This document shows, piece after piece, positions 1-49,246 of a stretch of DNA of 64,000 bases. How positions within the stretch are numbered: position 1 is the first letter of the stretch; each line of letters opens with the position of its first letter. The notes beneath the pieces were generated by a model. It was not told the origin of the DNA. It was given only the letters and a program-made list of their open reading frames with translations, and ran no database searches. The position numbers were made by a program, and so were the translations under genes. The stretch is from Oopsacas minuta (taxonomy: Eukaryota; Animalia; Porifera), in assembly GCA_024704765.1 (NCBI GenBank), contig JAKMXF010000222.1, positions 248,001 through 312,000 on the forward strand, written 5' to 3'.

Positions 1-363
1 TTCACAAATTCACGAAGAAACCAGTATTCTGAAGTATGGCAATCAATCTAATAGCAATTCTACATCTCTTCAAAATAGCCAATTCAACACAAATTCTCCG
101 CCGATTGTAGAAGTTGCTTCTTTCTCAGTTACACAAGGTATGGACAACAAACACAAATAAACAAAGAACATATAATTTTGATTAAATGCTCTCTTTTATA
201 TTTATACTCTCCTTCACAAGCACAACAAGTATCTCAAAATGGAGTAATCAACACAATTTCACCTAAAACTGGTTCTCCTTCTATTGATAAAGTATCTCCT
301 CTGCCAGTTACTAAAAGTATATAACAGCAATGTATATTAACAAACAAACAAACTAACTAATAA

Positions 364-11400: not shown

Positions 11401-14400
11401 TAATAGGTTGTTGTGAATGGTCTAGTGATGCCTTTGGTATCCGTGGTTTCAATGGTGTCAGAATAATATTATTTTTATCAACACCAGAAAACTGAGTATC
11501 TCCGTTAGAATCATCGTCACTTACCGTCCGAAACACATCTTCCATGGACGTATGCGAAATTCCATAACTCTCAATGCCCAACTCGGTAGAACTGTTTTCA
11601 AATACTTGAAAAAGTTGTGCAAACTTACTTGTATCATGAGAGGGAATAATATAAGAAATCTCAGATCCTATATCGTCTTTAAGATATGCATTAGGAAGGA
11701 AATTTCCTAATATCTGTTTGATACGTGGGCCATCAAAGGTAGGAGATTTGACAATAGTAAGATGGTATCCTAGTCCAAACTTGTTCTTTAGAAAGAGAGA
11801 TGAGCCACACGTCTTGAGGACACCTTCAGAAAGAATCGCTATTCTATCTCCGAGAATATCTGCTTCATCCATGTGATGAGTTGTGAGTAGGATAGTACGG
11901 TCTTGTTTGTACTTTAATAGGAGGTCCCATGTTGTTCTGCGTGCGTATGGATCAACACCTGGATAATCAAAAGTAGTTTATCAATTCGTATTTGAGAAAA
12001 TAAGAAATATCACTATTTATGATATAAAATCAACTTTCCAGATTTCCTGAATGATAATGAGCTTGTAGTATTTACATACTTCCCGAAAATATCCAAATAT
12101 GGCAAAAAATTAGATATCGTAAGACATGAATTCCAGGGAAAACCAGGGATCTCGGGAGTGTTTAGCAAGTATGTATTTTACTAACCTGATGTCGGTTCAT
12201 CCAGTATAATAACTTTTGTATCTCCAATCAACGCTAGACCTACAGACAATCTTCTTTTCATACCGCCAGATAACTGTGAAGATAGGGTGTTCACTTTATC
12301 TTCAAGTTTCGTATTGGATAACATCCCTTGAACTTGAATCTTGGCCTTCGTCCAACCCCAAATGCCTTTGAGACGAATAAAGAAATGTAGATGCTCCTTG
12401 ACAGTCATTCTATCAAACAATATATTTGACTGTGGACAAATGCCAAGATGGTTTCTTATGCTATCCATCTCATTGTGTATGTTCATACCATAGATATAAG
12501 CGTTACCTGGAAATAATCTCACTATTAACAGTCCAGAAATGTAAGCGTGAGCTAGAATCTCAGGGTTTCTCAACCTGTGGTCATATGGCCAAACTGAGGC
12601 ATACTTTGGGTCACAGAGACTTAATCATTTTTAAATAGTCAACTTGGGTGTGGCCCATGAAAGTTTGAGAAACCCTGTAGCAGCTAGATATAAATAGATT
12701 GTCTTACCATTAGTAGGAGGAATCAATCCAGTGAGTATGGATATTAGAGTACTCTTGCCAGCTCCATTATGCCCTAGTAATGCTGTGATTTGTCCACGAT
12801 ACATATTCAATCTGAGATTGTCCAGTGCTATCTTTTTGCGAGTATATTTCTTCGTAATACCTTCTATCTGTATTCCTACTTCGATATCATCAGGTTCAAC
12901 TTCGAATACGTCATTCGTCATAACAGAATTGCTCGAATTTACACGAGAACGAGAACAACATTTCACTGAAGAGCCACACCAATATGATGAAGTGAATGGG
13001 AAGTAAAATGGTTTTCGTAATCCAAATGTTTTTGGTAAAACTTCATCCAAATACCAAGTCAATAAGAATTGCACTACACAGACAAGTGTCATCATTCCAA
13101 ACACATGTAACATGTTAAAATGGTCTGTAGCTGTTGTGGGCTCGGCTATATTGTCCCATTGTACACCTACATTCTCAATCTCACGTGATATGAAAATCCT
13201 AATAGAAATAGACATACAAGTATTGCCTAACAGACAACTAAGGAATTTGCCATATAACGGAAGACTATCGTAGTTGACAAAGAGGAAGAGATAGGGGAAG
13301 AAAGATAAAAACCAGACTAGAAATGAAACTAATAATCCAAGTCGTGATGATGTGAAGAAAGTACTGACAAGAAATGACAGAGAAATCATATAACAGACGT
13401 ACAACATCAGCCATATAAAGATAATCAAGAAGTTAGAGAGTGAGAAAATCAAACCGAAGTGCAACTCTAAGGCTAAACAAACAACCACAAGCGACATGAA
13501 AATAATTTGTTTGGTAAACCAAGACAACCAGTTTACCCAATTCAACAGACCCATCATTTTCATCGACTCCCTTAACCGTGTTTCTTTCTCAATAACGATC
13601 TCTTTAGTAATTGTCCCTGCGGTGTAAATAAAGCTAAACACAATCAGTATAGGCAAGAGGAAGCCTAGAGCTATCAAGAAGAAATCTTCCTTGTATTTAG
13701 GGTAAGGGAATTGTCTGATATCAATTGGTACCTGTTCATAGTTCAAACTGCTCTGACTTTTATTAGTGATTTTGTAATCAATAATAGATTGTGATAACGC
13801 ATCTTGAATGACTAGGAATCCTTCACTAATGTAAGGGCTAGTAGAGACACGAGGTGCTGCTGTCCTGATGCTCGGCTCCACTTGTGAGGTTCTCCAGTTC
13901 ACGGAAGTTTCTTGGTTGAGACGAATGGTTACTTCAATTTCTGTGTCCAATTTATCGAAAATCAACCCAGCAATAATTGGAAGATGAACACTAATTAAAG
14001 AAAGAGATAATTTTCAATACTTTTTCTGAGTCATGGCGTGTTCAATATGTGATTGTCCTACATTTTGGTACAGTGTTACTACGAACGGAGCTTATGGTAA
14101 CGGGAAACTTCTGGAAACGCAGTGAAAGATCGATGTCACGCTAAAAAAACAACTTCCATCTAGTTTTTTCCTCATTCCATGAGTTGTATGAGATTTTACG
14201 GGGAACAATGCAGTAAATTGTAGGGATCTCAACCTCGAAACTCTCGAAATCGTGAGATTCGTCAAAAATCTCTCGATTCTATCGTGAAATGTGCAATTTA
14301 GTATTAGTTTTCTAGTAAAAGACCAAGGATTCTGCAGTAATTGTAGACCCGAAATCGTGAGAGTTGAAAGCCCTGAAGTTGAACAATGAAACTTAACTTA

Positions 14401-14880
14401 CCTTGCATAACTCAGGGCAGTTTGACACACATAAGGATTTGTAAGAGGATCAGATGAGTTGATTCCATTGATAATATCAACAGATAGTCTTTCTATTTCT
14501 AGCTCACTACTGGTAGGGGTAAAATTAAGAGTCACGTTTGGGATTGAGAGTATTTGTTTCGCTCTATTCACTATCGCATCTGTTGCAGGAGTTTTGGGAG
14601 TGTAAAAATAAGTAAAGTTACAATTCTGTGGAGTAAAAACGCTTGAGAAAGGAGGCTGAGAGGATGATGAGGCTAGAGGTTCGAATTGTAAACTTGTCGC
14701 GTCAAATGTCCTGAAACATTTGAATTCAGGGGTTGCTATTGTGTAACGGAGGATAACTAATACCGCTAGTCCGAAGATTGGGTTGATAAGCTCGAAAATC
14801 GTGCCAATAGGCCTTCTGAATTGGAGGAGAAAGTTTTTCCACAAAAGAAGGAAAAACTGGAGCAGTATCTTGAGGTTCAT
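8429..14880 (-). CDS. ABCA: Full-size ABC transporter, subfamily A (ABCA3-like); 4 exons
   Basis: N-terminal LLLWKNFLLQFRR; NBD1 GHNGAGKST/LSGGMKRRLS/LDEPTSG; NBD2 GVNGAGKTT/YSGGNKRKLS/LDEPTTG; two TM domains. Exons 14880-14402, 13990-12708, 12506-12186, 11958-8429. Confidence 0.95.
12561..12677. mobile_element. hAT-like MITE (TIR CAGGGTTTCTCAA) in an ABCA intron; related copy at 31874-32028
   Basis: Perfect 13-bp TIR; degenerate 8-bp flanks tagaatct/tagcagct; internal 'ctgtggtca' and 'tggcccatgaaa' shared with the 31874-32028 copy. Confidence 0.75.
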
Positions 14881-15121
14881 TGTAAATTCTGATTCATTCC
14901 AATAAATATTCACATCTGTCAGATAAATTGGTACACTAACAAGTGATAAATCAGAAATATAAAATATAATATTTAAGAGTTGAAATTTTGTCAAATGCCA
15001 CTTCAATCGTGCCAACTACCAAAATTTTAACAACTAGATTCACAAAATATTCTCCTCATAAATTCAAATATTGCAAATGAAGCTCGTTTTTCTTTGATAT
15101 CAATTATATGAATAGGAAACC

Positions 15122-15268: not shown

Positions 15269-18126
15269 ATGGCTGAAACTATTAAAAACTGGGTAACTGA
15301 ACTTGATGGAGAATTGGCAGTCCAGGTTTGAGACTATTGAACATATAATAGTCTACATTTCTGATATTTTACATTATTTAGGTCGGGAAAGAAGGATTGA
15401 GTGCTCTCCCACCTCGCACCATTCCAGACATCTTCAGAGATGGCTGTGCTAAATTTGAGTCTAGCATAGTATATGATACTAAAAGAGATGGGAAATGGGT
15501 ACCTACAACTTTCAACAAAATGTATGAACAGTGTATGTGTGTAGCCAAGTCCCTTCTAGCTGTTGGTTTGAAGAGATTTGAGGGAGTTAGCATTATGGGG
15601 TTCAATTCACCTGAGTGGATAATGGCAGAATTGGGAACCATCATGGCAGGTGGACTAGCCACTGGTATCTATACAACCAACAATGTAGAAACAACAAAGT
15701 ATATTCTGGAGAATTCTGGTAGTCGTGTTGCGATTGGAGAACACAGCTTGATACTGGAGAAGTTGTTAGAGGCAGGGAAGGGAATTGAGGGTATGAAGTT
15801 TGTACAATACTCACCAGTTCCTGTAGAACAATCTCAGAGGGAGAGAGGAGTGATCAGCTGGGAGGAATTCTTACAATTGGGAAAGGTATAAATAGAAATA
15901 TAGAATCATTTTTGGGAAATATTTATCTGCTGTTATAGGATGTAAAGACAGAAGATGTAGAGGCTATAATATCAACTCAGAAACCAGGACAATGTAGCGT
16001 ACTTGTATACACATCAGGGACTACAGGAATGCCAAAGGTAACACAGTTAACACCCAAAAAGGAGAATTTATGTGTATTCAATTGTTTCTTCTAGGGAGTA
16101 ATGTTGAGTCATGACAACCTTTATTTCATTGCAACTTCTCTCTGCAAGTCTTATAACATCAAACAGGTACATTAATACTATTGACAAATTGTTATGTATT
16201 TATATCATATTTTGTATAGGGCCTTACTTCAATCTCTTATCTTCCACTCAGTCATATCGCAGCGATATTATTTGTAAGTTTTAATGGCTAAATATGGGAT
16301 TTTATGTTGCAAACAGATGAAGATATAATCAGTACAATGACAGTAAACTCTCGTTATAACAAAGTTCTCGGGACCCTGTTTTCATTTCGTTTGAAGCGGA
16401 GTGCAAACAATTACTTTCAAGCTAAAGAATCACTTCGTTATAACTGGAGTTTACAGTAGTATTTATTGTCATTCATTGTCATTGAATTTTAGGATATTAT
16501 TATTCCACTACTCGTTGGTTCTGAGACTTATTTTGCAGAGAGGGATGCTATGAATGGATCAATAACTGAAACCATCAAGTTAATTACAATAAATATGTAA
16601 CTGCGTAGAAATCCAATATTACAAGATATTTTTGGATGAACAATTTCTAAAATATCGGGTTTCTACTGCTTTTATATTTACTGTCATTAATGTACTGGAC
16701 TCTCTAAGACAATAATTTATTATTATATTCAATCTGTAGGAAGTACAACCAAATTTGTTCTTAGGAGTTACCGGAGCGTGGGAGATTATTTATTCATTGA
16801 TTTTACCAGCTGTCTATTCTGGAGAGTATGTTTTATTATATTAGTTGTTCACTTACTCAGATTATTATTGTTACTAATATTCAGAGTACATCTTGAAGAT
16901 GTGAGAAATACTCTGGGATTAAACAAAGCAGAATTAATGGTGAGTTACGTAGGGTTGCCGTTTGAATGAAATTTCGATTCCCAACACATCCCCACAGGAT
17001 TTCCCATAGGATTTTCCATAGGATTTTCTCATTGGAAAAAGTTATTCCCATTTCCATAGCAACCCTAGAGTTATGGAATTTATTACAGAAGTGTTAAATT
17101 TAAGTGATATATGCAATGATTTAATTATTTATTAATTTTCAGTTCATTGGAGCATCACATCCATCTCAAGCATTATTGGAGTTCTTTAAGGGTGCAAATA
17201 TGCAATTATTAGAGTTGTATGGATGCACAGAAACCGCAGGACCTTGTACAGTCTCATTACCTGGTTGCAATAGAAACGGAGCAGCGGGTAAGATAATGGA
17301 CGGAGCTGAATTGAAGATCTATCAACCCAATAGGTGATTATGTTATGATTTGCAGAACATGCTACTTTTCCAATTACATAATATAATTTAGTAATGGTGA
17401 AGGAGAGATATGCATTAGAGGTAGACATATATTTATGGGATATCTGAGGAACCCTGATAAAACAGCTGAAGTGATAGATAATGATAGTTGGTTTCACACA
17501 GGAGACCTCGGGTATACTGACTCAGAAGGTATTTTAGTAATTGATTAAAACTGCAATTAGTATATTTATACGTATTTTAGGGTTTATTTGGATAGTTAGC
17601 CGTATTAAAGAGATACTAATACACGCAACTGGAATGAATGTAATTCCAATGCCAATAGAAGAAGATATGAAGAAAGAACTGAAGCTGTGTGCCTTCTGTG
17701 TTGTAGTAGGTGAAGCTAAGCAGCATTTCAACATGTTAGTAACTCTAAAGAGTAAACTGAGTCCAGCTGGTATTCCTACAGATGATCTAGATGATGAAGC
17801 TGTAGGCATTTGTAAGAGTCTAGGAGTGGAAGTGAATAAAATAAGTGAGGCAAAGGAGAGTGTTGCAGTAAAGAAGTATATTCAGGATGGAATCAATAGA
17901 GCTAATGAGAGAGCTATGAATCATTTGTGTTTGATAAAGGTATTATTATCAAACTATTGAATGTATTTATGTAATGTCATTTATACGTGTTTTCTTATTC
18001 TAGAAGTTTACAATTCTTCCACTGAATTTCTCCATAAACACAAATGAACTTACTCCTACAGGTAAACTGAAGAGATTATATGTTATGAAGAAATATTATG
18101 ACGTAATAGAGAAAATGTACGCTTGA
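15269..18126 (+). CDS. ACSBG: Long/very-long-chain fatty acyl-CoA ligase, bubblegum family, copy 1; 12 exons
   Basis: GFNSPEW, GIYTTN, YTSGTTGMPKGVMLSHDN, SYLPLSH, YGCTE, GRHIFMGY, FHTGDLG, ELTPTGKLKR. Confidence 0.92.
16341..16456. mobile_element. Small CAGT-terminated MITE in an ACSBG-1 intron
   Basis: cagtaaactctcgttataac ... gttataactggagtttacag, imperfect TIRs. Confidence 0.6.
16950..17067. mobile_element. hAT-like MITE (TAGGGTTGC TIR) with 8-bp TSD, in an ACSBG-1 intron
   Basis: tagggttgcc ... agcaacccta; flanks gagttacg/gagttatg (7/8); internal 'ccataggattt' repeats. Confidence 0.8.
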
Positions 18127-18541
18127 ATAACTTGCTCATAACACTTGTACTGAAAATTTTTCATTAATTATCCACTAATCTTCCATTCTAATTAATATTC
18201 TACGTATATGTCTGCTAATTATAATTGCTTCCAAAGAGATTCTCCAAAGATTTTCGGGACACATTCAATTGATGTATATGTATCTATTAATTAGCTTACG
18301 TAAAAATATATTTCATAGAAGATAGAAGAAAGTTCTTTTGTATTATATTTAAGTGATAGTCTCAGGAATTCAATTTATACACAAGGCACGAGTTTGATTT
18401 TATCAAACGTTCAAGAGATTCTCCTATTGAGGAGGTTCTATTGTTACCGAAGCCCTTGTTCACATTATACCTTTTCTTCCTTTCTTTTGATATAAATATG
18501 ATTTTAATAATATGAGAGTAATTACTGTTTGACCTTTGTAA

Positions 18542-21500
18542 ATGGATCAATTAGAACCAAATGGAAAATATTATGTAGAATCTAGCAAGACTCCTGATAG
18601 AGGTAAAAAGAATGAAAGGGGAAAATCGTATTCTCATGATGGGAAAAATGTGCTTTACATGGCCAGAAAAAAGAAATTGGTAAGTCTACAAATCTTGATC
18701 TAAAAACACGATTTTCATAAATATTTTATTCGCATACTTACCAACACCTTTTTGTCGAACATTTACATAAATCTTTTTGACACTATCTTTAATGTTTAAC
18801 ATTTTATTAAATTCTACAACTTGTAGTCTAATCAAGGTAGTCAGGAGAGTATTTTAAGCTTACAAAGTTCAAGCTACAGAAACTTCAAGAAAGGATTTGG
18901 AAATACCACGAAAGATATGGAAAGTATAGTTTCCAGTTGGGTAACGCCACTACATACCGCTGCAGCTGAAGGAAGATGTGATCAGCTTAATCTCTTACTG
19001 GAGTATGAAGAAGTAGATATAAACATACAAACTAAGCTGTACAATGACTATGAAGGGATTATCGTGCTTAATAATACACCTCTGCATTTAGCAATAGAAA
19101 ACGGTAGGAATTTATATTTTACTTAAGCATTAGCTCGGGGAATGCTGCAAGCATATGAATTTCAAGTTTATACATTAACTTTCATACAAATAACAAATTG
19201 AACCAAAGTCCCCGTGCATTTCGTTATAACGTGAGTTTAGTGTACATTTACAATATAGGACATGCTGCCGCAACAACTTTATTGCTAAAGAATGGAGCTA
19301 ATAGTGAGATACAGAATGCAATGGGATGTACAGCATTACATGTAGCTGCTATAAACGGTGTATCTGCTGAGATTGTACAGGATTTGATTCAAGATAGTTT
19401 CCTGTTAGCTTTAAGGGATAAAAATGGTAAGATTGTTACGAAAAATGCAAAGGAATAAATAGCAACATTAAACTGGATAGCATTTTTCGGCCAAAGACGC
19501 CGAAAATGCTACCCAGTTTCCCCGTTGTGGGGGTTCATCTGTATGGGACTAGGAATTCGCTTTATATATTTTCACTCCGTTTTCCAGGAGTTCCCTGTTT
19601 CTACAGGCCCAGTTTATGGGCGTTTCGCTGTACTTTATTTACAAATTATTCCCGTAGGTCGTACTCCGCTATTCTGTGCAGCAGAAGAAGGCTGGCATAA
19701 TCTAATTCCTCTCCTCTTGGATCAAAACGGTTGCATAGAATTAACAGATAATACAGGAGAAACCCCGTTAATTGTTGCAACAAAAAATGGGTTCTCTCAA
19801 ACAATGAAAATACTCCTTGCATCAGGTGCTCATATGTTTACACGTGATAAGAGAGGATTAAATGCAATGGATTATGCTCTCCGTGTAAATGAAAGGTCTA
19901 TACAAGATGAGCAAGTATTCGATCAGGTTCTATCAACAATGTTGAATAATGAATCGAAAGAAACTGCATTAGCACATTTACATAATATTCTATACAAATA
20001 CAACAAAATTCGTTTGAAAGAATGTATAATATCTCTACTGAATAGAATCCCGGAATTGAGAGCAAGGAAAGGTGAGTTTAACATAAGAAAATCGGTGAAT
20101 TTTTTACACTTTTCTATGCAAAATTTAAAATCATGCTAGAGATTAGGAATTTTGACCATTTCAAATCTATTACTATATGATTTCTCATATGATTAATCTT
20201 ATTTTCATTATAGTTATAATATGTTCAAAGTATCTTGAATGCAGTTGTGACGGTCTAACTCCAGATAACAGTGAATTTAGCTCCCGATTTCTCACTCCCC
20301 TTCAAATGATAGCAGATACATACGATGAAAATTTTGCGTTCCATCCACTCGTACGGGTAATTGTAGACAAGAAAATGAGAAGTCTTGGGTATTATTATTT
20401 ACTATTTGAGATGGCATATTTGTTATTTTTCCTCTTTTCCATTTTCTTTATATTCACTACAGCCGCCTCTATGCCAGATCCTCTAACTTACACTACAAAT
20501 ATTGATTATGTACGAGCAGTATTTGAAGCGATTGTCGTCCTACTTTGGCTTTGCACCTTAATCATGGAAATAGCAGAACTCGTTACGGATTTTATTCGTA
20601 TTTATCATAAAGAGTTGGCAATTGTAAAGGAAAAACAGAAAGAAATGGAGTCTCTAATAGGGATGGTAGCACGTAGTCTTCTTAGCGTTTATTTCCTAGA
20701 CGTATTTAACTACTTTGATATTTTAGGAATTGTAGTATTATTTCTAGTGCTTCCATTTCGTTTAGCCGGTAGTCCAGTCCAGTGGATATTCGCCACTCTA
20801 ACGATTCTCATACATTTCATGCGATTTATAAAGGTTGTGAGACTTTTGCCCGGTTTCGGTACTTACGTACATACTATTGGATTAATAGCTCTGAATGATG
20901 TGCCGAAATTCTGTATTGTGAGTTTTACGATAATTATAGTAATTTCTCAGTCATTTTTCATTGCGTTACGTGTACCATATGCTCATGGAATGTTAACTAA
21001 TATTAGTGCCAGTGAGATTGGAGAACAAGGTCTTTATGATACGTTCTATTGGACTCTGCTATTTATGACTCGTGTATTGCTACAAGGTGAAAATATTTTG
21101 GATGATAATTATCTCTTCAATAACTTGAATTGGATGAATGCGATTATCTATTTGTTTGCAATGGGATTGATTATTGTAATTTTGCTGAATATATTCATTG
21201 CTCAGGTATGTTTGCATTTCAAAATATCTTGGATGTGTGTATATAATTTTTTGAGTTTTTTGCTTGTAAAGACGATTCCCATTTCGATTCCCATTAAGTT
21301 AAGTATACTCTACAGTCAACTACCGTTATACCAAACACCGATAGATAGAAATACTCCCTTCAATCGAAGTCTGAAATTGTATAAATATGGTCCCAAACTG
21401 TCAAAGTATTATATATTTCTTCGGATATATCGAAGTAGTCATCGTAGTCCCTCGAGCTTCATTATAAGGGGGGAGTGACTGTATTTATTTCTCCCAACAA

Positions 21501-21994
21501 TTCAGTTTTTATCTCTTTAGTGTATTTCTAGGTAAGTGATACATATGCAACAGCTAAAAGCAAGTCAGAACGTATTGTAGCTCTATACAGATTGAAGTTT
21601 ATTGTTCGAAGAAATCGGAATACACTTATGGTTATTCGTCGTAGAATTTATGAACCAGAACTTGTGATCAAAGGCAATAATTGGAAAGCTTATCAGAAAA
21701 GTTAGTAAATATGTAACAATTTTTTGCAAAAAAATGTTTGGTTTCTATTTTGTGTTTTATCTATTATATTCAGCTACAGGTGGAAATTTAGATGAATTGA
21801 CGAGTTTATTGGAGAGGCAAACAGCTAATTTAGAACAGTTTAAACTACAAATTCGACAGCTGAAGATTTCAATACAAGACCAAAGAGTTAGACATTCAGA
21901 ACGACCATATTTTTGTATGAGTAGTCCAGTGTCCTTCGAAGAATATGATAAAGCCCGAGAGATGGACCAAATACAATCTGAGACATCAGTCTAA
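18542..21994 (+). CDS. Ankyrin-repeat TRP cation channel (TRPA/TRPV-like); about 7 exons
   Basis: About 6 ankyrin repeats (TPLHTAAAEG, TPLHLAIENG, TALHVAAING, TPLFCAAEEG, TPLIVATKNG), six TM helices, S6 LLNIFIAQVSDTY, C-terminal coiled coil. In-frame 5' exons from ATG 18542. Confidence 0.9.
19470..19633. mobile_element. MITE-like repeat in a TRP intron; reverse-complement relative at 62306-62481
   Basis: 19521-19633 matches the reverse complement of 62306-62420 (gtaaccgccgaaaaccgggcctgt..caaagcgaattcc..gggtagcatttt); internal hairpin 19470-19519. Confidence 0.7.
21313..21481. mobile_element. MITE family 1 (CAGTCAACTC TIR, TA target), about 9 copies in the window
   Basis: TA-cagtcaact...gagtgactg-TA. 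Shared core tttgacggtttgggaccatatttgtac..gatataagcgggtatttctatatatcc also at ~2440-2545, 35171-35504 (two nested), 37406-37589, ~39395-39516, 40310-40473, 48992-49119, ~62843-62949. Confidence 0.9.
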
Positions 21995-22138
21995 CTTCTA
22001 ATTTCCTTCCATGAGGATTGAATTATTATATATTTATTGCTCTGCTCTTAGTATTGGATATCCTGGTCATGGCAAAATTGTAATTCTCAGCTAATAGTCT
22101 TATCTATATATGAATTATAATTCTAAATAAACTGCTTT

Positions 22139-22646
<508 letters not shown>

Positions 22647-22716
22647 GAAATTTTAATCTGAAGTGAACAAAAATACGTAGATATAATAGATTCTATTTGG
22701 AATGGGATGGCATAAA

Positions 22717-25315
22717 CTAAGCATACATCTTCTCTATTACGTCATAATATTTCTTCACAACATATAATCTCTTCAGTTTACCTGTAGGAGTAAGTTCATT
22801 TGTGTTTATGGAGAAATTCAGTGGAAGAATTGTAAACTTCTAGAATAAGAAAACACGTATAAATGACATTACATAAATACATTCAATAGTTTGATAATAA
22901 TACCTTTATCAAACACAAATGATTCATAGCTCTCTCATTAGCTCGATTGATTCCATCCTGAATATACTTATTCACAATAACACTCTCCTTTGCCTCACTT
23001 ATTTTATTCACTTCCACTCCTAGACTCTTACAAATGCCTACAGCTTCATCATCTAGATCATCTGTAGGAATACCAGCTGGACTCAGTTTACTCTTTAGAG
23101 TTACTAACATGTTGAAATGCTGCTTAGCTTCACCTACTACAACACAGAAGGCACACAGCTTCAGTTCCTTCTTCATTTCTTGCTCGATTGGTATTGGTGA
23201 TACGTTTAATCCAGTACTGATTACTATTAACTCCTTCATACGGCCATTTATCCAAAGGTATCCTTCAGAAACATAAAATATTTATTGAATTAATCTACAA
23301 GTATGTATGTGTCCTACCTTCTGAATCCAGACTTCCAATATCTCCACTATGAAACCAACCATCTGCATCCATTGATTCTGCAGTCTTTTCAGGATTCTTC
23401 AAATAACCCATGAAGTTACCTCTTGTCTTTATAAATACCTCACCTTCTCCAATACTGCAGGAAAACTCATTAAATCCAAAAGTTAAGGAAAAGATTAAGG
23501 AATTTTTGGAATTTTAAGGTTAATTCATTACGCTCTTAATAGATAGGCCATAGTCAGTTTGAATGCAACACTTTTGCAAATTTTGATATTTTTCGGAATA
23601 TATTATGGAGTTGCAAAGTAAGGACTATTTTTCATTACTCAATTACCTATTTGGCTGGTTAATAATAATCTCTGTACCCTCTGCTGGTTTCCCCACAGAT
23701 ATTACTTTATTTGCATTAGGTGTACACAGTGTAACTGGTCCTGAATTCTCTGTCGTACCGTAAATATTGTATAAAGTTAAACCTGCGCTATCAAATAATT
23801 TGAAAACTTCTGGAGAAGTGAAAGCTGCTCCTGTTAACTGTGCAAAATTATGAACTTGAACTAATATTATTGAAAAGATCTTACCAGAACGTCTGCATTG
23901 CTCAATCCAATCAATTTTGCGATATCTTCAATTTTGATCCTTTATGATATATAAATATTTATACAAGTTTTTAATGAAAGGAATTTATGTAATAAATGCT
24001 TTACTTTCCATTTCTGATATCTGGCTCAATCTTCTCAAGTATTAGCTCCCAAACACGAGGAACGCCAAAAAGTAAATTCGGTTCTACTTCCTACAATTAA
24101 AGAAAGAGTAATCCAAAGTATTTTACATAGATTAACATGAACAATAAACCTTAATCGTGTTTAATAGTGATCCACTCATTGCATCAGACTCAGCAAAGTA
24201 CACTTTATAACCAAAGGTAAATGGAAGAAAGACATCCTATAAAGATGCAGAAATTCAATTTTCAAGTGTCCTAAAATAACAAAATTACCGAATGGAATTA
24301 CATACAAATATTTGTCCTCCTAAGTGACTGAAAGGAAGATAGCTCACAATTATTTGACCCTATAAAAACGAATACAATTAAGTTTGGATACATCAATGAA
24401 ATACAGCAAATAAATACCTGCTTGAAACCATATACATCACCAATCAATGTTGGAAACCAGGTCATATTGTCATGACAAAGCATTACACCCTATAATAGAA
24501 AATAGTAAATTGCATGATAATCTATGGATGTAAGTAGTGAATACCTTTGGCATTCCTGTAGTCCCTGATGTGTATACTAGATTAGTACATTGTCCTGGTT
24601 TCTGAGTTGATATTATAGCCTCTACATCTTCTGTCTTTACATCCTATTACAGCAGATAAATATTTCCCAAAAATGATTCTATATTTCTATTTATACCTTT
24701 CCCAATTGTAAGAATTCCTCCCAGCTGATCACTCCTCTCTCCCTCTGAGATTGTTCTACAGGAACTGGTGAGTATTGTACAAACTTCATACCCTCAATTC
24801 CCTTCCCTGCCTCTAACAACTTCTCCAGTATCAAGCTGTGTTCTCCAATCGCAACATGACTACCAGAATTCTCCAGAATATACTTTGTTGTTTCTACATT
24901 GTTGGTTGTATAGATACCAGTGGCTAGTCCACCTGCCATGATGGTTCCTAATTCTGCCATTATCCATTCAGGTGAATTGAACCCCATAATGCTAACTCCC
25001 TCAAATCTCTTCAAACCAACAGCTAGAAGGGATTTGGCTACACGCATGCACTGTTCATACATTTCTGTAATAGTTATATATTCCCATTTTCCTGCACGCT
25101 TTACGTTCCATGCTTTGTTAGATCCAAATTTTGAAAAGCTGCCTTTAATCAAATCAGGAATGGTGCGAGGTGGGATGGCGCTAATTCCTTCTTTTCCAAC
25201 CTAATTAAGAACAGTGTGACTATTAGCTTGTATACAAATAGAGCTACCATCTAACTACCCTTATCGTTATTTCTGCATTTGGCTCTGTTACCCAATCTGG
25301 TACTACTTGTGCCAT
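22717..25315 (-). CDS. ACSBG: Bubblegum-family acyl-CoA ligase, copy 2; 12 exons
   Basis: Same exon structure as copy 1; YTSGTTGMPK, SYLPFSH, GVPRVWE, YGTTE, FHSGDIG, ELTPTGKLKR; no frameshift or stop seen. Confidence 0.92.
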
Positions 25316-25554
25316 TTGAAATCCTACTTCCGTATTGCTTTAAATTACAGAGAAATTGTAGTTATTGGGATATTAATTCAATATACATATAAGAATACAT
25401 GAATACGTATTCAGCTCCATACAAAGATTTAAACTATTTACAATCAATTACTACAGGGAATTATTTCTAAAAAGAAGGTTAATTACTAGCATAACAACAT
25501 ACAAGAATTCTTATAAGGTGTATCTACTGTAGATCTACAAGCTTGATAGAATAA

Positions 25555-28396
25555 TCATTTTGAGTACATCTTCTCTATTACGTCATAATATTTCTTCACA
25601 ACATATAATCTCTTCAGTTTACCTGTAGGAGTAAGTTCATTTGTGTTTATGGAGAAATTCAGTGGAAGAATTGTAAACTTCTAGAATAAGAAAACACGTA
25701 TAAATGACATTACATAAATACATTCAATAGTTTGATAATAATACCTTTATCAAACACAAATGATTCATAGCTCTCTCATTAGCTCTATTGATTCCATCCT
25801 GAATATACTTATTCACAATAACACTCTCCTTTGCCTCACTTATTTTATTCACTTCCACTCCTAGACTCTTACAAATGCCTACAGCTTCATCATCTAGATC
25901 ATCTGTAGGAATACCAGCTGGACTCAGTTTACTCTTTAGAGTTACTAACATGTTGAAATGCTGCTTAGCTTCACCTACTACAACACAGAAGGCACACAGC
26001 TTCAGTTCCTTCTTCATTTCTTGCTCAATTGGTATTGGTGCAACTTTTTGTCCAGATCCTATCTTCAATATTTCCTTTATGCGTCCATTTATCCATACAA
26101 AACCTGAATAATTAATGAAATTGACTTTATTAACAAAAAGTAAATTTATCGTAACCTTCAGAATCGATATATCCAACATCTCCAGTATGAAACCACCCGT
26201 CAGTATCAATAACTTCTGCTGTCTTAACGGGATCTTTCAGATAACCCATGAACAAATATCTACCTCTTATTAGAACTTCACCTTCTCCTTCACTGAAAAA
26301 TAATTATTTTCAAAAGTATAAAAATTCAAAAAATATACCTCCACAAAAAGGAACGCTGATAAATGCTACCGCGTTTCTGCCAAATTCCACGTTTGTGGAG
26401 GTTTCACTATATACATCATTTTACCTGTTCGGTTTGTCAATGATTAATTCACTGCCTTGTATCGGCTTCCCCACAGAACCAACTTTATTAGCATGAGGTA
26501 AATTCATAGCAGCTGGCCCACAAATTTCAGTTGTACCATACAGGTTATAAAGGGGTAATCCTGCATCTGCCAGGAATTCGTATACACTGAGAGGAAGAAT
26601 TGCAGCTGCTGTAATCTACAGTGGATCTCGTTAATAAGAATACAGTTTATATGACTTCCTGATAAGGAGTACAAAATTGATTATTTCTTACAACTCACCA
26701 ATATTCTAGCTTTGCTAAGACCAATTGATTTAGCCACGTCACCCGTAGGCAATCTGAAATATATTATACGAACATGTCAAATAACAGCATTCAATATGTA
26801 CTCGATAAGATAGAAATTTGTGTCATTTACCTTCCAGTTTTGACTTCAACTTCGACCTTTTCAAAAATTAGCTCCCAGACTCGAGGTACTCCCAAAAATA
26901 CGTTTGGCTCAACCTCCTAGAAGAAAGCTAAATACATAATTCGCCAGTAAATTCCTTCAGCAATTATATATGCTGAAGTGAAATTTTGAAAAGTTGTTTA
27001 GAATACAGTGGACTGTCTTTTAACTAGTCGTAACTTGCATATATTTCCCTTACAAATATACATTAGATACAGAGATGTGTATAAGAGACAAGCATTTCCC
27101 ATGCAAAACGAATTACATGTCCCTGAAAAACTTGCTATCACAGTAATATAATCATTGATATTCAGAGCAATTACTGATTAACAAACATACTACACAAAGC
27201 TCAATAAATATGTACTAACCTTCAGAGAGTCAATTAGTGAACCACTCAATACATTAGACATAGCAAAATACACCTCACATCCTGATATAAATGGCGTGAA
27301 TACATCCTATCATCAAATTAGTTTAATTCTTAATCCTATTTTGTAAATAATGTCAAAAAAACATGATTTGTACTTACAAACATTTGTCCTACAACATGAC
27401 TTGATGGAAGATAACTTAGTATGCGATCTCCCTAGAAATAATTAACTCTGTTAGATTGGAAATCATTCGATTATTCAATACGTGAGTCTTTACCTGTTTG
27501 AATTTATATTCTAAGTTCATTAATGTTGTAATCCAGATCATATTGTCATGCGTTAGCATAGTACCCTAAAAGAGAACATTAAATATGTTGCATGGTAGTT
27601 TAAACTCCATACCTTCGGCATTCCTGTAGTCCCTGATGTGTATACTAGATTAGTACATTGTCCTGGTTTCTGAGTTGATATTATAGCCTCTACATCTTCT
27701 GTCTTTACATCCTATTACAGCAGATAAATATTTCCCAAAAATGATTCTATATTTCTATTTATACCTTTCCCAATTGTAAGAATTCCTCCCAGCTGATCAC
27801 TCCTCTCTCCCTCTGAGATTGTTCTACAGGAACTGGTGAGTATTGTACAAACTTCATACCCTCAATTCCCTTCCCTGCCTCTAACAACTTCTCCAGTATC
27901 AAGCTGTGTTCTCCAATCGCAACACGACTACCAGAATTCTCCAGAATATACTTTGTTGTTTCTACATTGTTGGTTGTATAGATACCAGTGGCTAGTCCAC
28001 CTGCGATGATGGTTCCTAATTCTGCCATTATCCACTCAGGTGAATTGAACCCCATAATGCTAACTCCATCAAATCTCTTCAAACCAACAGCTAGAAGGGA
28101 TTTGGCTACACACATACACTGTTCATACATTTCTGTAATAGTTATATATTCCCATTTTCCTGCACGCTTCACGTTCCATGCTTTGTTAGATCCAAATTTT
28201 GAAAAGCTGCCTTTAATCAAATCAGGAATGGTGCGAGGTGGGATGGCGCTAATTCCTTCTTTTCCAACCTAAAGATATAAAAATTATATAAATTAAAAAA
28301 TATGTTTATACGTATATGTAACCTAAGACTTACCCTTGCTATAGTATCAATTTCTGAAGTTGGTTCACTCACCCAATGCTTTTGATTCGAAGCCAT
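25555..28396 (-). CDS. ACSBG: Bubblegum-family acyl-CoA ligase, copy 3; 12 exons
   Basis: YTSGTTGMPK, SYLPSSH, GVPRVWE, YGTTE, FHTGDVG, ELTPTGKLKR; intact splice phases. Confidence 0.92.
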
Positions 28397-28925
28397 CTTA
28401 GATTAATAATTTTATCGTTTAATTTGATATCAGCTGTAAGCTACCAACTATGTTAATGTAGAATTTAAGATTAATAACATAGTAGACAAGAAATATCAAG
28501 TTGTATACAAGTAACTTCGGTATACTATTAATATTCCACAAACTATTTCTATTCCAGGTTTTATATTTCCATAGAGATGTCACGATGAGGTGATTGGTAC
28601 ATATAACTCATGATATTGAAACCAATATAGACATACATTTACATGTATCATACTTCAAATAGTTTTGTGGGGAAGTAATAACTGTATGTCCAAAGTTACT
28701 TCTCTATAAATTGATGTTTAGAATATTTAGAAACTTATATTTTAGTGCTTTTTTGAAAATTGGGGATACTTTTTGAAGTACGTATAGCATATACTCGTTA
28801 ATTCTTCGTAGTAAAATAGTTGATAGAGTTAACTCAAATTAATAGATAAAATGCGACCTTTATTATTCGACTATTCACCATAAACAGTTGATAAATTCTA
28901 AATTGCTTTATTTATAATAGCAAAT

Positions 28926-31900
28926 ATGGCAGCAGAAACTCCTGCAAACTGGGTTACGAATCCCTCAGATGAAGTAGTTATACAGGTTTGTTCATATTTT
29001 AGTTGTTACTTGGGGATAAATTTATAATTTCCCAACAGGTCGGGAAGGATGGAGTGGCTGCTCTTCCACCTCGAACCATTCCAGACGTTTTCAAAGAGAA
29101 ATGTGATCAATTTGGAGCTGCCAAAGCATTGAATGTAAAGAGAGATGGAAAGTGGCAATCGACAACATTCACAGAGTTATATGAACAGTGTATGCGTGTA
29201 GCCAAGTCCCTTCTAGCTGTTGGTTTGAAGAGATTTGAGGGAGTTAGCATTATGGGGTTCAATTCACCTGAGTGGATAATGGCAGAATTAGGAACCATCA
29301 TGGCAGGTGGACTAGCCACTGGTATCTATACAACCAACAATGTAGAAACAACAAAGTATATTCTGGAGAATTCTGGTAGTCGTGTTGCGATTGGAGAACA
29401 CAGCTTGATACTGGAGAAGTTGTTAGAGGCAGGGAAGGGAATTGAGGGTATGAAGTTTGTACAATACTCACCAGTTCCTGTAGAACAATCTCAGAGGGAG
29501 AGAGGAGTGATCAGCTGGGAGGAATTCTTACAATTGGGAAAGGTATAAATAGAAATATAGAATCATTTTTGGGAAATATTTATCTGCTGTAATAGGATGT
29601 AAAGACAGAAGATGTAGAGGCTATAATATCAACTCAGAAACCAGGACAATGTAGCGTACTTGTATACACATCAGGGACTACAGGAATGCCAAAGGTATAC
29701 AGATTTACTATTTGTATACTTTCAATACTTCTCATATATTTCCTGTTGTAGGGTGTTATGCTGAGTCATGACAATCTCATCTGGACGACGATTACACTAA
29801 TGGGTCCTTTCAATTTTAATTTGGTTAGTAATATGCCTACAATATTGTGTGTTAAGACCACACCATATTTATGTTATTTTCCATTTTACAGGGTGATCCT
29901 GCAGTTAGCTATCTTCCTTTCAGTCATATCGCTGGACAAATATTGGTAAATCAATAGTACAGTATATGATCAGGTTAGTCAAATACGTTATATATTGTTG
30001 ATTATATTTATAGGATATTATAGCAACGTTCATTATTGGTCTTGAAATTAATTTTGCACAACCAGATGCTCTGAAAGGCACACTAGTAGAAACACTGAAG
30101 GTAAGTGAATATGCATCTACAGTAGACTCTGCTTAACAGAGCTATAGTCAATCAGGTCACTTGTCCAGAAACAGAACCATACAAATAGAGTAAAATTACT
30201 CCAGTTAATCGGGCCAAAATGGCCTGGTCCCAATGTGACCCTATTAAGCAGAGTCTACTGTACTTGTATTGGGAAACTATTTCCACTTTTACGATCATAT
30301 TTACTAGGAAGTGGAACCAGTCAATTTCTTGGGAGTGCCAAGAGTTTGGGAAAAGATGAAAGACAAAATAGAACCTGCAGTTAAGGCTGGAAAGTGAGTA
30401 CCCAATTTAAGTTTTTAACATACATGTATACGAATTATTTTAACTTTTGTATGCAGAGTACCACTTCCAGCTGTTAAGAAAATTTTAGGGCTCGGAAAAG
30501 GACAGAAATTTGTAAGTTAGGATCAGACAAAATTTTCTACTTCGTACAATTCAACAATTTCCTATTTCAGTTTACGGCAGCAGCACCAACCCCAATTGCA
30601 GTACTTAACTTCTTTGAAACTGCTGACTGTAAAATTCTTAATGTTTATGGTACCAGTGAGAATTCCGGTCCAGCCTGTTTTTGTCTACCTGATGTGGATA
30701 AGACTGGATCTGTTGGTAAACATATGATAGGTACAGAGGTTAAGCTTCATAAGCCTAATAGGCAAGTATTATTTTATATCATAATTTCCCATGTACATAT
30801 ACGATAAGGCCTCAGTTAATGACAAACTTGTTCAGCTCCACATGATGTCCATCTAAGCATGCGCGCGGGCGCATTTCATTATCATTATCTCTTTACTTTA
30901 TGACGTTATCATACAAGTGAGTTAGTAAATATATTATGTGTAGTTGAATTTCACTGAGAAAATGGTGAAATAATGACAATATTCATGTGGCAGGTAAACT
31001 TGATGCGGGCGGTGGAGCTGAAATAATTATCCAACTAACAATAGCCTAAACGAACTCCCCAAATTGCAAGATAATTTTACGCACTTTTGTAGTTTGATAA
31101 TGGAATAATAAGCGAAAGCACAATTTATACGTATTTATTTGTGTTTAGCATCCACTTGATTCATTAAAATATTGTTATTAAGTTAAATATAATGCAATAC
31201 GTTAGCAATTCTGAAAATCATCAGTAAGCATAGAATTAATCTTTGTCTATATAGTGAGGGAGAAGGAGAGCTGTGTCTTAAAGGTAGACATATCTTCATG
31301 GGATATCTCAAGGCTCCTGAGAAAACTAAGCCTGTTATGGATGCTGATAGTTATTATCATACCGGTGATTTGGCCAAAATTGACTCAGATGGTAAAATAT
31401 ATTATATTTTTTGTAGAATCAAAGAAACTTTTTTGGTTAATTCAATTGTTTGATATTATTAGGTTTCGTGTGGATTACTGGTCGCATTAAGGAGCTGATA
31501 GTTACCTCTGGTGGAGAGAATATTGCTCCAGTAGTAATAGAAGATGAGATGAAGAAAGAAATACTGTTATGTGCTTACTTTGTAGTAGTTGGAGATGGTA
31601 AAAACTATCTCAACATGTTAGTAACTCTAAAGAGTAAACTGAGTCCAGCTGGTATTCCTACAGATGATCTAGATGATGAAGCTGTAGGCATTTGTAAGAG
31701 TCTAGGAGTGGAAGTGAATAAAATAAGTGAGGCAAAGGAGAGTGTTGCAGTAAAGAAGTATATTCAGGATGGAATCAATAGAGCTAATGAGAGAGCTATT
31801 TCTAATGCTGCGAAAGTACAGGTAATCACATTGTATAAATTAATTCATAAATATTTTTCCAGTCATATATTTGCAGGGTTTCTTAACCTGTGGTCAAATG

Positions 31901-32195
31901 ACCTCACTATGACCACAGATATATTACATCATTTTTCAATTTGATTTCTATCGCCATTTTCTAGTGAACTTTGACCAACAAGTTTTTACTTAGCGCGGCA
32001 ATGGCCCATGAAATTTCGAGAAACCCTGATCTATTATTTTCATATTTATTAACTTGTTTCTTTTCCTTATAGAAATTCGCCATCTTACCCCTTGATCTAT
32101 CAATTGCTGGAGATGAACTAACCCCTACTGCTAAGCTGAAACGTAGCTTTGTTATTAACAAATACGCTGATGTTATTGCAAAGTTATATGCATAG
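28926..32195 (+). CDS. ACSBG: Bubblegum-family acyl-CoA ligase, copy 4 (most canonical); 12 exons, one GC-AG intron
   Basis: GVPRVWEK, YGTSE, ITGRIKELIVTSGGENIAP, SNAAKVQK, ELTPTAKLKR. Confidence 0.93.
30120..30260. mobile_element. Tc1/mariner-like MITE with perfect 17-bp TIR and TA flanks
   Basis: TA-cagtagactctgcttaa ... ttaagcagagtctactg-TA in an ACSBG-4 intron. Confidence 0.85.

Positions 32196-39610: not shown

Positions 39611-49246
<9,636 letters not shown>

What the first reader, a model, noticed from the sequence alone, without database searches (positions are those of the whole stretch)
15269..32195. Four ACSBG paralogs are sequence mosaics: homogenised blocks (introns included) around a highly diverged middle
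Block A (15521-16040, 24542-25062, 27610-28130, 29179-29697) is nearly identical in all four copies; I count about 3 differences between copies 1 and 4, including a 53-nt intron. The very next intron and exons 4-10 share little DNA similarity. Block B (17667-18120, 22722-23178, 25565-26018), with a 64-nt intron, is near-identical in copies 1-3, but copy 4 shares only its core (~31611-31799). The genealogies conflict: diagnostic variants group 1+4 versus 2+3 (CSVLV/CTNLV, VAVKK/VIVNK), whereas the C-terminal exon and intron group 1+2+3 versus 4. Inference: repeated ectopic gene conversion keeps the N-terminal/P-loop and C-terminal modules uniform while the acyl-binding segment is free to diverge, a conserved-scaffold/variable-pocket system.
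Basis: partly seen in the sequence, partly recalled or inferred. Interest (0 to 1): 0.75.

Follow-up and report, generated by a model that had tools for sequence, protein, structure and literature searches.

The report
Mosaic gene conversion in sponge ACSBG cluster
Four neighbouring fatty-acid-activating (ACSBG-type acyl-CoA synthetase) genes of the glass sponge Oopsacas minuta are ancient duplicates whose front and rear parts, introns included, have been overwritten by copying between the genes; this is a clean but ordinary case of partial gene conversion.

Summary
The window is Oopsacas minuta scaffold DNA. It holds four intact 12-exon ACSBG-like genes of 607-610 aa: c1 on +, c2 and c3 on -, c4 on +.

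- **Block A** (about 520 nt: rear of exon 2, the 53-nt intron 2, exon 3) is 97.5-99.2% identical in all four.
- **Block B** (about 454 nt: rear of exon 11, the 64-nt intron 11, exon 12) is 97.8-99.8% identical in c1-c3. c4 shares only a 188-nt core, identical to c1.
- **Between the blocks**, exons are 42-72% identical and introns are at the shuffled-sequence baseline. dS is 1.25-3.3 there against 0-0.08 in the blocks.

In the middle, c4 is 76% identical to a Vazella protein but only 47-50% to c1-c3, and monophyly of the four is rejected (AU p=0.0007). In the blocks the four form one clade. Exon-2 fragments from other hexactinellid contigs show the same block A, with the same left boundary.

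The best reading is interlocus gene conversion between old paralogs, a known kind. A selected "scaffold/pocket" system is not shown. The assembly gap lies in an intergenic (ATT)n repeat and touches no gene.

The parts
15269..18126 (+). Copy c1: 12-exon ACSBG-like gene, 607 aa, open reading frame intact. Exons: 15269-15325, 15382-15885, 15939-16037, 16095-16166, 16220-16273, 16493-16579, 16740-16825, 16885-16939, 17143-17333, 17392-17528, 17581-17939, 18004-18123, then TGA.
   Evidence: Spliced alignment to the Vazella protein P0027 and to P0035. Junctions were corrected by reading the DNA. No in-frame stop. PF00501 and PF23562 hit single exons.
16580..16581 (+). Non-canonical donor of c1 intron 6 (AAG|TTAATT, where the other copies have GT). 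It may be a splice defect, a young pseudogene, or a base error.
   Evidence: All other c1 junctions are GT-AG. Nearby alternative GT sites would shift the frame or run into TAA.
22717..25315 (-). Copy c2: 12 exons, 607 aa. Exons: 25315-25259, 25200-24697, 24643-24545, 24489-24418, 24359-24306, 24236-24150, 24090-24005, 23939-23885, 23837-23647, 23454-23318, 23262-22904, 22839-22720, then TAG.
   Evidence: The model is 100% identical to the NCBI Oopsacas minuta protein P0046.
25555..28396 (-). Copy c3: 12 exons, 610 aa if exon 1 is 28396-28334 (donor AGG|GTAAGT). Remaining exons: 28268-27765, 27711-27613, 27565-27494, 27431-27378, 27306-27220, 26916-26831, 26753-26699, 26615-26425, 26292-26156, 26103-25745, 25680-25558, then TGA.
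   Evidence: No in-frame stop.
28926..32195 (+). Copy c4: 12 exons, 608 aa, the conserved lineage with a Vazella ortholog. Exons: 28926-28985, 29039-29542, 29596-29694, 29752-29823, 29892-29945, 30014-30100, 30308-30393, 30457-30511, 30571-30761 (GC donor), 31255-31391, 31463-31821, 32073-32192, then TAG.
   Evidence: The model is 100% identical to the NCBI O. minuta protein P0045 and 80% identical to Vazella P0027.
15521..16040 (+). Block A in c1: rear 365 nt of exon 2, intron 2 (53 nt), exon 3 up to the P-loop, plus 3 nt of intron 3. Counterparts: c2 24542-25062 (-), c3 27610-28130 (-), c4 29179-29697 (+).
   Evidence: 97.5-99.2% identity in all pairs. Both edges are sharp. dS is 0.015-0.066. 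The genome holds exactly four copies.
25063..25204 (-). Extension of the tract between c2 and c3 only: the front 139 nt of exon 2 and the last bases of intron 1. Counterpart in c3: 28131-28272.
   Evidence: For c2-c3 here dS is 0.03 and dN is 0. The other pairs have dS 0.6-1.7.
17667..18120 (+). Block B in c1: rear 273 nt of exon 11, intron 11 (64 nt), and exon 12 to the stop. Counterparts: c2 22722-23178 (-), c3 25565-26018 (-).
   Evidence: 97.8-99.8% identity among c1-c3. Intron 11 is 100% identical.
31612..31799 (+). Core of block B in c4. It is identical to c1 17730-17917 and 96.8-97.3% identical to c2 22926-23113 and c3 25767-25954. The c4 sequence on both sides of it is diverged.
   Evidence: 0 mismatches in 188 nt. 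The flanks have dS of 1.1 or more, or saturated.
15997..16004 (+). Clustered 6-nt difference inside block A (CSVLV in c1/c4, CTNLV in c2/c3), just before the P-loop.
17865..17873 (+). Clustered 5-nt difference inside the block B core (VAVKK in c1/c4, VIVNK in c2/c3).
22140..22673 (.). Assembly gap (N 22259-22471) inside an (ATT)n microsatellite. The flanks are duplicated (22140-22258 equals 22555-22673). It is intergenic, 3' of c2, and most likely a scaffolding artefact from overlapping contig ends.

Best explanation
The four genes are old tandem or inverted duplicates of an ACSBG-type long-chain acyl-CoA synthetase in the glass sponge Oopsacas minuta. The split between c4 and c1-c3 predates the Oopsacas/Vazella divergence. 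Non-reciprocal interlocus (ectopic) gene conversion has since repeatedly copied two segments between the genes.

- Block A covers aa 66-220, the N-terminal subdomain up to the P-loop, and includes intron 2.
- Block B covers most of the C-terminal domain from aa 477 and includes intron 11. A shorter core tract links c4 with c1-c3.

Tracts end where homology ends. On the 3' side that is intron 3 and the 3'UTR. On the 5' side it is inside exons 2 and 11. The middle (exons 4-10 and the front of exon 11) carries the gate/A4, A5, A7 and A8 motifs. It is too diverged to pair, or conversions there are selected against. It stays as separate lineages under purifying selection.

What is shown: the mosaic, the silent-site and intron homogeneity, the tree conflict, and the same pattern in other hexactinellid assemblies.

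What is inferred:
- The mechanism is a non-crossover repair pathway.
- The B core was copied from a c4-type sequence. In the core, c1-c3 are 79-81% identical to Vazella, against 53-57% in their flanks.
- Any adaptive value.
For: 1. Anatomy. All four genes have the same 12-exon structure and intact reading frames. The c2 and c4 models equal the NCBI O. minuta proteins P0046 and P0045.
2. Identity profile. The blocks are 97.5-100% identical, introns 2 and 11 included. Between them, exons are 42-72% identical and introns are at the shuffled baseline.
3. Substitution rates. dS is 0-0.08 in the blocks and 1.25-3.3 in the middle. Middle dN/dS is 0.12-0.36.
4. Cross-species comparison. In the middle, c4-Vazella is 76% and c4-c1..3 is 47-50%. 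In block A, c4-c1 is 99% and c4-Vazella is 89%.
5. Trees. The middle tree is (c1,(c2,c3)) beside (hexB,(c4,Vazella 100/98)), and O. minuta monophyly is rejected (AU p=0.0007). The blocks give an O. minuta clade (93/93), and the c1-c4 path is 0.012 against 1.37 in the middle.
6. Private variants. Each copy keeps its own variants inside block A (c1 2, c2 3, c3 3, c4 1), and there is one incompatible 13|24 site.
7. Other hexactinellid contigs carry several exon-2 copies that are 96-100% identical in block A but 40-67% just upstream, with the boundary at the same 'YEQ'. On the upstream part, k300_P0008 pairs with k1272_P0043 (95/90). On block A each pairs with its own contig-mate (k300 100/99; the k1272 pair is identical).
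8. Only four block A copies exist in the assembly.
Against: - The assembly is a hybrid SPAdes, SSPACE, Pilon and GapFiller build from several individuals. De Bruijn bulge removal or short-read polishing could have erased some real differences inside the blocks, or mis-threaded which middle joins which ends. No reads were available to check this.
- The reverse constraint on the block tree (c4+Vazella+hexB as one clade) is only marginally rejected (AU p=0.068).
- A GENECONV-style run test on polymorphic sites is significant for c1-c2, c1-c3 and c2-c3 (P<=0.0001) and for c1-c4 (P about 0.013). It is not significant for c2-c4 or c3-c4, because a block shared by all four holds few polymorphic sites.
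- GC3 is only modestly raised in block A (37-39 against 28-30) and not in the B core, so there is no clear biased-conversion signature.
Confidence: 0.82

Rival explanations
1. Assembly artefact. The near-identical blocks are collapsed or over-polished repeats (a de Bruijn repeat edge copied into four paths, or Pilon homogenisation), so the real copies differ much more.
For: The build was hybrid SPAdes (k up to 99), SSPACE, Pilon and GapFiller, on DNA pooled from several individuals. A scaffolding artefact sits next to c2. The blocks (about 450-520 nt) are longer than the 150-nt reads.
Against: - Each copy keeps private substitutions and shared patches inside the blocks.
- Reads cannot cross-map or collapse unless the copies are already very similar, so the contrast with 42-72% exons remains.
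- Independent assemblies of other hexactinellids, and a Vazella transcript, show the same homogenised block A with the same boundary.
- The c2 and c4 models match the annotated proteins.
Confidence: 0.06
2. Recent duplication of a whole gene, followed by very fast divergence of the middle only (positive selection or local hypermutation), without any conversion.
For: The middle holds the substrate-side motifs. c1-c3 have long branches and altered conserved motifs, for example GVPRVWEK to GVTGAWEI in c1 and SGGEN lost in c1-c3.
Against: - Synonymous sites in the middle are saturated (dS 1.25-3.3) and its introns cannot be aligned, while dN/dS is 0.12-0.36.
- In the middle, c4 is far closer to Vazella (76%) than to c1-c3 (47-50%), and O. 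minuta monophyly is rejected.
Confidence: 0.02
3. Reciprocal exchange. Unequal or inverted-repeat crossing-over, or duplication of already chimeric genes, built the mosaic instead of (or together with) non-reciprocal conversion. For example, c1-c3 may share one 3' end through chimeric duplication.
For: The 3' part of block B, with intron 11 and exon 12, is shared by exactly the clade c1-c3 of the middle tree. The c2-c3 tract covers the whole of exon 2. The mixed orientations (+,-,-,+) suggest past inversions.
Against: - dS in these shared parts (0-0.08) is far below the c1/c2/c3 middle divergence (1.25-2.3). They were therefore exchanged long after the duplications.
- Block A joins all four genes in both orientations without loss of the sequence in between.
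- The 188-nt c4 core is an internal patch, which is typical of conversion.
Confidence: 0.1

Closest known systems
Partial concerted evolution by interlocus gene conversion with persisting 'islands of divergence', as in mammalian gene pairs converted for over 100 Myr (PMC2720389) and the GOT1 paralogs of Tigriopus (PMC3728101)
   Same: - Paralogs are more alike than orthologs inside the tracts.
- Introns and silent sites are homogenised.
- Tract edges are sharp.
- Diverged segments escape conversion.
   Different: - Four genes in mixed orientation take part.
- The contrast is very large: saturated dS against about 0.02-0.08.
- The left boundary of block A recurs in several glass-sponge assemblies.
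Plasmodium falciparum acyl-CoA synthetase (PfACS) family: duplication and gene conversion (Bethke et al. 2006, PMID 16860410; seen only as a citation in PMC3337437, paper not held)
   Same: An expanded acyl-CoA synthetase family for which gene conversion among paralogs is reported in the paper's title. Different substrate specificities are predicted for its members (PMC3337437).
   Different: It is an unrelated lineage and I could not check which ACS subfamily it belongs to. Details of the tracts could not be read here.
ACSBG1/ACSBG2 ('bubblegum') long-chain and very-long-chain acyl-CoA synthetases of animals
   Same: - PF00501 and PF23562 are present.
- The P-loop YTSGTTGxPKG, the A5, A7 and A8 motifs, and the C-terminal TPTxKLKR lysine are present.
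- The best named hits are ACSBG2 at 41-44% identity.
   Different: - The hexactinellid cluster genes are shorter (about 607 aa).
- They lack a segment of about 37 aa that Amphimedon ACSBG2 has.
- c1-c3 have changed several otherwise conserved positions.
- Enzyme activity was not tested.

Membership tests
ACSBG subfamily of ANL/AMP-binding acyl-CoA synthetases | AMP-binding domain (PF00501) plus the AMP-binding C-terminal domain | tested here: met
   Single exons hit PF00501 (E=3.8e-17 for exon 2) and PF23562. The database proteins P0045 and P0046, which equal c4 and c2, carry both domains.
ACSBG subfamily of ANL/AMP-binding acyl-CoA synthetases | Closest named relatives are ACSBG rather than ACSL, ACSVL or other ANL enzymes | tested here: met
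   A search with the Vazella ortholog P0027 returns ACSBG2 or ACSBG2-like proteins of sponges, ctenophores and vertebrates at 41-44% identity over about 99% of the length. No formal family-wide tree was built.
ACSBG subfamily of ANL/AMP-binding acyl-CoA synthetases | Catalytic motifs intact: P-loop, A5 YGxTE, A7 TGD, A8 hinge, A10 lysine | tested here: met
   The alignment shows all present in c1-c4. Exceptions in c1-c3: the A8 glycine is serine in c1, 'GVPRVWEK' is altered in c1, and 'SGGEN' is altered in c1-c3.
ACSBG subfamily of ANL/AMP-binding acyl-CoA synthetases | Activation of long-chain or very-long-chain fatty acids to acyl-CoA | not testable with these tools
   This needs an enzyme assay.
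Interlocus gene conversion / partial concerted evolution | Within the tract, paralogs are closer to each other than to orthologs; outside it, the reverse | tested here: met
   (c4 against Vazella and against c1-c3). (contigs k300 and k1272).
Interlocus gene conversion / partial concerted evolution | Homogeneity extends to silent sites and introns, which excludes protein-level constraint as the cause | tested here: met
   Intron 2 is 98-100% and intron 11 is 100% identical. dS is 0-0.08 in the blocks against 1.25-3.3 in the middle.
Interlocus gene conversion / partial concerted evolution | Statistically supported tracts with discrete boundaries | tested here: met
   Boundaries were read to within a few nt. 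The permutation run test gives P<=0.0001 for c1-c2, c1-c3 and c2-c3, and P about 0.013 for c1-c4. It is not significant for c2-c4 or c3-c4, because a block shared by all four is nearly monomorphic.
Interlocus gene conversion / partial concerted evolution | Non-reciprocal transfer seen directly, from donor and acceptor in populations or pedigrees, and copies verified by spanning reads | not testable with these tools

The most novel reading that the evidence does not exclude
The boundaries of the homogenised blocks are held in place by selection and have been stable since before several hexactinellid lineages split. The cluster would then act as a modular enzyme family. The N-terminal/P-loop and C-terminal modules would be kept constant within each species by conversion. 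The substrate-side cores would persist as trans-species lineages with different chain-length specificities, possibly tied to the C26-C32 delta-5,9 fatty acids typical of glass sponges (PMC2992992).
Probability: 0.2. Interest if true: 0.6.

Novelty: new member of a known kind. Interest (0 to 1): 0.4.

Why it matters
- **For annotators and phylogeneticists.** Whole-gene trees of this family will mislead. The blocks report recent within-species copying, while the middle reports ancient duplications. Any ortholog assignment or dating in glass sponges must be done block by block.
- **For evolutionary genetics.** This is an unusually sharp example from a non-bilaterian animal. It is replicated across species, so it can be used to ask whether conversion boundaries are kept by selection or by a self-sustaining homology barrier.
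- **For sponge lipid biology.** The locus has one conserved ACSBG (c4) and three divergent ones (c1-c3) next to an ABCA-type lipid transporter gene. These are candidates for handling very-long-chain fatty acids.

Tried and rejected
The DNA of the related hexactinellid contigs could not be fetched, so there are no cross-species DNA trees or dS values.
- The ESM Atlas and PDB sequence searches with exon 2 gave only generic AMP-binding hits. The PDB holds no close ACSBG structure.
- The word search with c2 exon 9 found nothing (one search was a coordinate-order slip). This says little, because short exons are rarely called as genes.
- The main claim does not rest on absence of relatives.
- I did not run structure prediction, because no coordinates are returned for mapping the blocks.
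- The GENECONV-like test on polymorphic sites has little power for a block shared by all four copies. I relied on dS, introns and trees instead.
- GC3 gave no clear sign of biased conversion.
- Earlier scan notes near the window concern other genes, and a word look-up was blank.
- Joined spliced models were never sent to a search tool. Searches used single exons by reference or database protein ids. Joined coding sequences were built only inside scripts, from window coordinates, for alignment, dS and trees.
Full report
**Identity of the DNA.** The window is G000:C222:248001-312000 of a 61,460,524-base, 365-contig assembly with 34% G+C. Two proteins annotated by NCBI as Oopsacas minuta long-chain-fatty-acid--CoA ligases, P0045 and P0046, are 100% identical to my models of copies c4 and c2. 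The published O. minuta genome has 365 scaffolds and about 61 Mb (PMC10280926). The organism is therefore the glass sponge O. minuta (Hexactinellida, Lyssacinosida, Leucopsacidae).

**The gap.** The only N run is 22259-22471. It lies inside an (ATT)n microsatellite beyond the 3' end of c2, whose stop codon is at 22717-22719. The 119 nt left of the gap (22140-22258: repeat plus the unique 'GAAATTTTAATCTGAAGTGAACAAAAA') are identical to 22555-22673 right of it. The two contig ends therefore overlap, and the gap is most likely a scaffolding artefact. No exon or reading frame is involved. It does mean that the linkage of c1 to c2-c4 rests on scaffolding plus this overlap.

**Gene models.** I wrote a small spliced aligner and aligned two transcript-derived hexactinellid proteins to each copy. 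These were P0027 from Vazella pourtalesii (EukProt) and P0035 from a Logan transcript, both found as cluster members. I then checked the junctions against the DNA.
- All four copies have the same 12 exons: 57-63, 504, 99, 72, 54, 87, 86, 55, 191, 137, 359 and 120-123 nt.
- Their reading frames are open (607-610 aa), with ATG starts and stop codons.
- Splice sites are GT-AG with two exceptions. c4 intron 9 has a GC donor. c1 intron 6 has the donor AAG|TTAATT. That TT may be a splice defect, a young pseudogene or a base error. Nothing else in c1 is broken.
- The layout is c1 (+) 15269-18126, c2 (-) 25315-22717, c3 (-) 28396-25555, c4 (+) 28926-32195.
- An ankyrin-repeat gene lies between c1 and c2, and an ABCA-type transporter gene lies upstream.
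- Joined coding sequences were built only inside scripts. Database searches used single exons by reference or database protein ids, and the joined models were not submitted to any search tool.

**Family.** Single exons hit PF00501 and PF23562. The Vazella ortholog finds ACSBG2 or ACSBG2-like proteins of sponges, ctenophores and vertebrates at 41-44% identity over the full length. The P-loop, A5, A7 and A8 motifs and the C-terminal lysine motif are present in all four. In c1-c3 several otherwise conserved positions have changed: GVPRVWEK is altered in c1, and SGGEN is lost in c1-c3. The genome also holds a more distant ACSBG2 paralog (P0047 on C310) and a near-copy of it on C317.

**The observation.** Self-blastn finds only two similar regions among the copies. 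Per-feature identities are as follows.

| Feature | Identity |
|---|---|
| Exon 2 | 89.5-98.6% |
| Intron 2 (53 nt) | 98-100% |
| Exon 3 | 93-100% |
| Intron 3 | 54-63% |
| Exons 4-10 | 42-72% |
| Other introns | at the shuffled baseline, 46 +/- 12% |
| Exon 11 | 79-93% |
| Intron 11 (64 nt) | 100% among c1-c3, 25% to c4 |
| Exon 12 | 94-98% among c1-c3, about 61% to c4 |

Base-level alignments show sharp edges.
- Block A runs from c1 15521, inside exon 2, to 16040, three bases into intron 3.
- c2 and c3 alone are also identical through the front of exon 2.
- Block B among c1-c3 runs from 17667, inside exon 11, to the stop codon.
- c4 shares only 31612-31799, which is identical to c1 17730-17917.

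Block B is 97.8-99.8% identical.

**More than chance or constraint.** Nei-Gojobori dS is 0.015-0.066 in block A and 0-0.08 in block B. In the middle it is 1.25-3.3, which is saturated, with dN/dS of 0.12-0.36. Identity of introns and silent sites rules out protein-level constraint as the cause. Saturated silent sites and unalignable introns in the middle rule out recent duplication with fast protein divergence.

**Cross-species test.**
- In the middle (aa 221-476), c4 is 76% identical to the Vazella protein but only 47-50% to c1-c3. That is no more than its 54% to the distant paralog P0047.
- In block A, c4 is 99% identical to c1 and 89% to Vazella.
- ML trees give, for the middle, (c1,(c2,c3)) [97/95] beside (hexB,(c4,Vazella [100/98])). 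Monophyly of the O. minuta copies is rejected (AU p=0.0007).
- For block A plus the B core, the four form a clade (93/93). The c1-c4 path length is 0.012, against 1.37 in the middle.
- The reverse constraint on the block tree is only marginally worse (p=0.068), which reflects how few protein characters there are.

The c4 lineage therefore separated from c1-c3 before Oopsacas and Vazella (different families) diverged, and the blocks were homogenised later.

**Other glass sponges.** A word search with exon 2 returned ORF fragments on long ENA contigs. Cluster look-up shows several copies per contig. Contigs are recognised only by their lengths.
- Within contigs, block A is 96-100% identical at protein level.
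- The 15 residues just upstream are 40-67% identical in three contigs (k621, k300, k1272). The switch falls at the same 'YEQ' as in O. minuta.
- On the upstream part, k300_P0008 groups with k1272_P0043 (95/90). k300_P0042 and k1272_P0044 fall with O. minuta c2/c3 (90/82).
- On block A, each copy groups with its own contig-mate (k300 100/99; the k1272 pair is identical).

Concerted evolution of block A with a recurring left boundary is thus a feature of the lineage, not of one assembly.

**Assembly artefact?** The genome was built with hybrid SPAdes, SSPACE, Pilon and GapFiller from several individuals. Some real differences inside the blocks may therefore have been smoothed, and mis-threading cannot be excluded without reads. 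Against an artefact:
- Each copy keeps private variants in block A (2, 3, 3 and 1), and there are shared patches.
- Exactly four copies exist in the assembly.
- The pattern recurs in independent assemblies and in a transcript.

Gene conversion is supported. The 'conflicting genealogies' are not a topological conflict. The splits 14|23 and 123|4 both fit (c4,(c1,(c2,c3))), which is also the tree of the middle. The conflict is one of depth and of placement relative to other species. Only one site in each block shows an incompatible 13|24 split.

The two clustered patches (6 of 8 nt at 15997-16004; 5 of 9 nt at 17865-17873) separate c2/c3 from c1/c4. They may be unconverted remnants or selected differences. 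I cannot tell which.

**Direction of copying.** In the B core, c1-c3 are 79-81% identical to Vazella, against 53-57% in their flanks. c4 is 71-87% identical to Vazella in its flanks. This suggests that a c4-type sequence was copied into the c1-c3 lineage. This is an inference.

**Function of the pattern.** Block A ends at the P-loop and block B is most of the C-terminal domain. However, the middle is under purifying selection and is anciently diverged. A neutral homology barrier, in which conversion cannot enter sequence that is already too different, explains stable boundaries as well as selection does. GC3 gives no clear sign of biased conversion.

**Comparison with what is known.** Partial concerted evolution with islands of divergence is well described (PMC2720389, PMC3728101). 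Gene conversion in an expanded acyl-CoA synthetase family is reported for Plasmodium falciparum (Bethke et al. 2006, cited in PMC3337437; the paper itself is not held). No paper in the library joins ACSBG with gene conversion in any relevant way, and the O. minuta genome paper does not mention it. Glass sponges carry C26-C32 delta-5,9 fatty acids (PMC2992992). That makes a link with very-long-chain fatty-acid handling plausible but untested.

**Verdict.** This is a real and well-delimited feature: a new member of a known kind, of moderate interest.

Noticed in passing
window 8429-15015 (-): A large ABCA-type transporter gene lies directly upstream of c1. Its exons hit ABC2_membrane_3, ABC_tran and the ABCA1-like R1 regulatory domain. 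A lipid exporter next to a fatty-acid-activating cluster may or may not be meaningful.
   Followed up: partly
window 19198-21478 (+): An ankyrin-repeat gene (Ank_2 hit at 19525-20139), followed by a 433-aa ORF with no Pfam hit, lies between c1 and c2. The ACSBG cluster is therefore interrupted.
   Followed up: partly
window 2452-2515, 21311-21467, 35166-35507, 37401-37592, 40356-40475, 62832-62952: A short dispersed repeat family (about 60-180 nt, 74-93% identical, both orientations, some adjacent inverted pairs near 35.2-35.5 kb). It looks like a MITE or SINE. One copy sits between the ankyrin gene and the gap.
   Followed up: no
L005 (G000:C310:316508-320011) and L006 (G000:C317:11490-14774): The distant ACSBG2 paralog locus on C310 and a locus on C317 are 93.8% identical over 1.8 kb, non-coding DNA included. 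This is either a recent duplicate or an uncollapsed haplotype.
   Followed up: partly
window 16580-16581: c1 intron 6 begins with TT instead of GT, although the c1 reading frame is otherwise intact. c1 and c3 did not appear among the annotated O. minuta proteins returned, whereas c2 and c4 did.
   Followed up: partly
protein alignment, after c1 aa 317: All hexactinellid ACSBG-like proteins, including the canonical paralog P0047, lack a segment of about 37 residues that Amphimedon ACSBG2-like P0052 has after the 'EPAVK' region.
   Followed up: no
window 35877-36368 (+) and 36566-37162 (-): Exons of a G-protein alpha subunit and of a protein kinase lie downstream of the cluster.
   Followed up: no
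window 1-141 vs 1023-1163; 45359-45657 vs 47740-48022; 44931-45087 vs 54905-55094: Further local repeats: one pair 99% identical and two pairs 79% identical. The last two lie near the WDR5 region that another note of the scan mentions.
   Followed up: no
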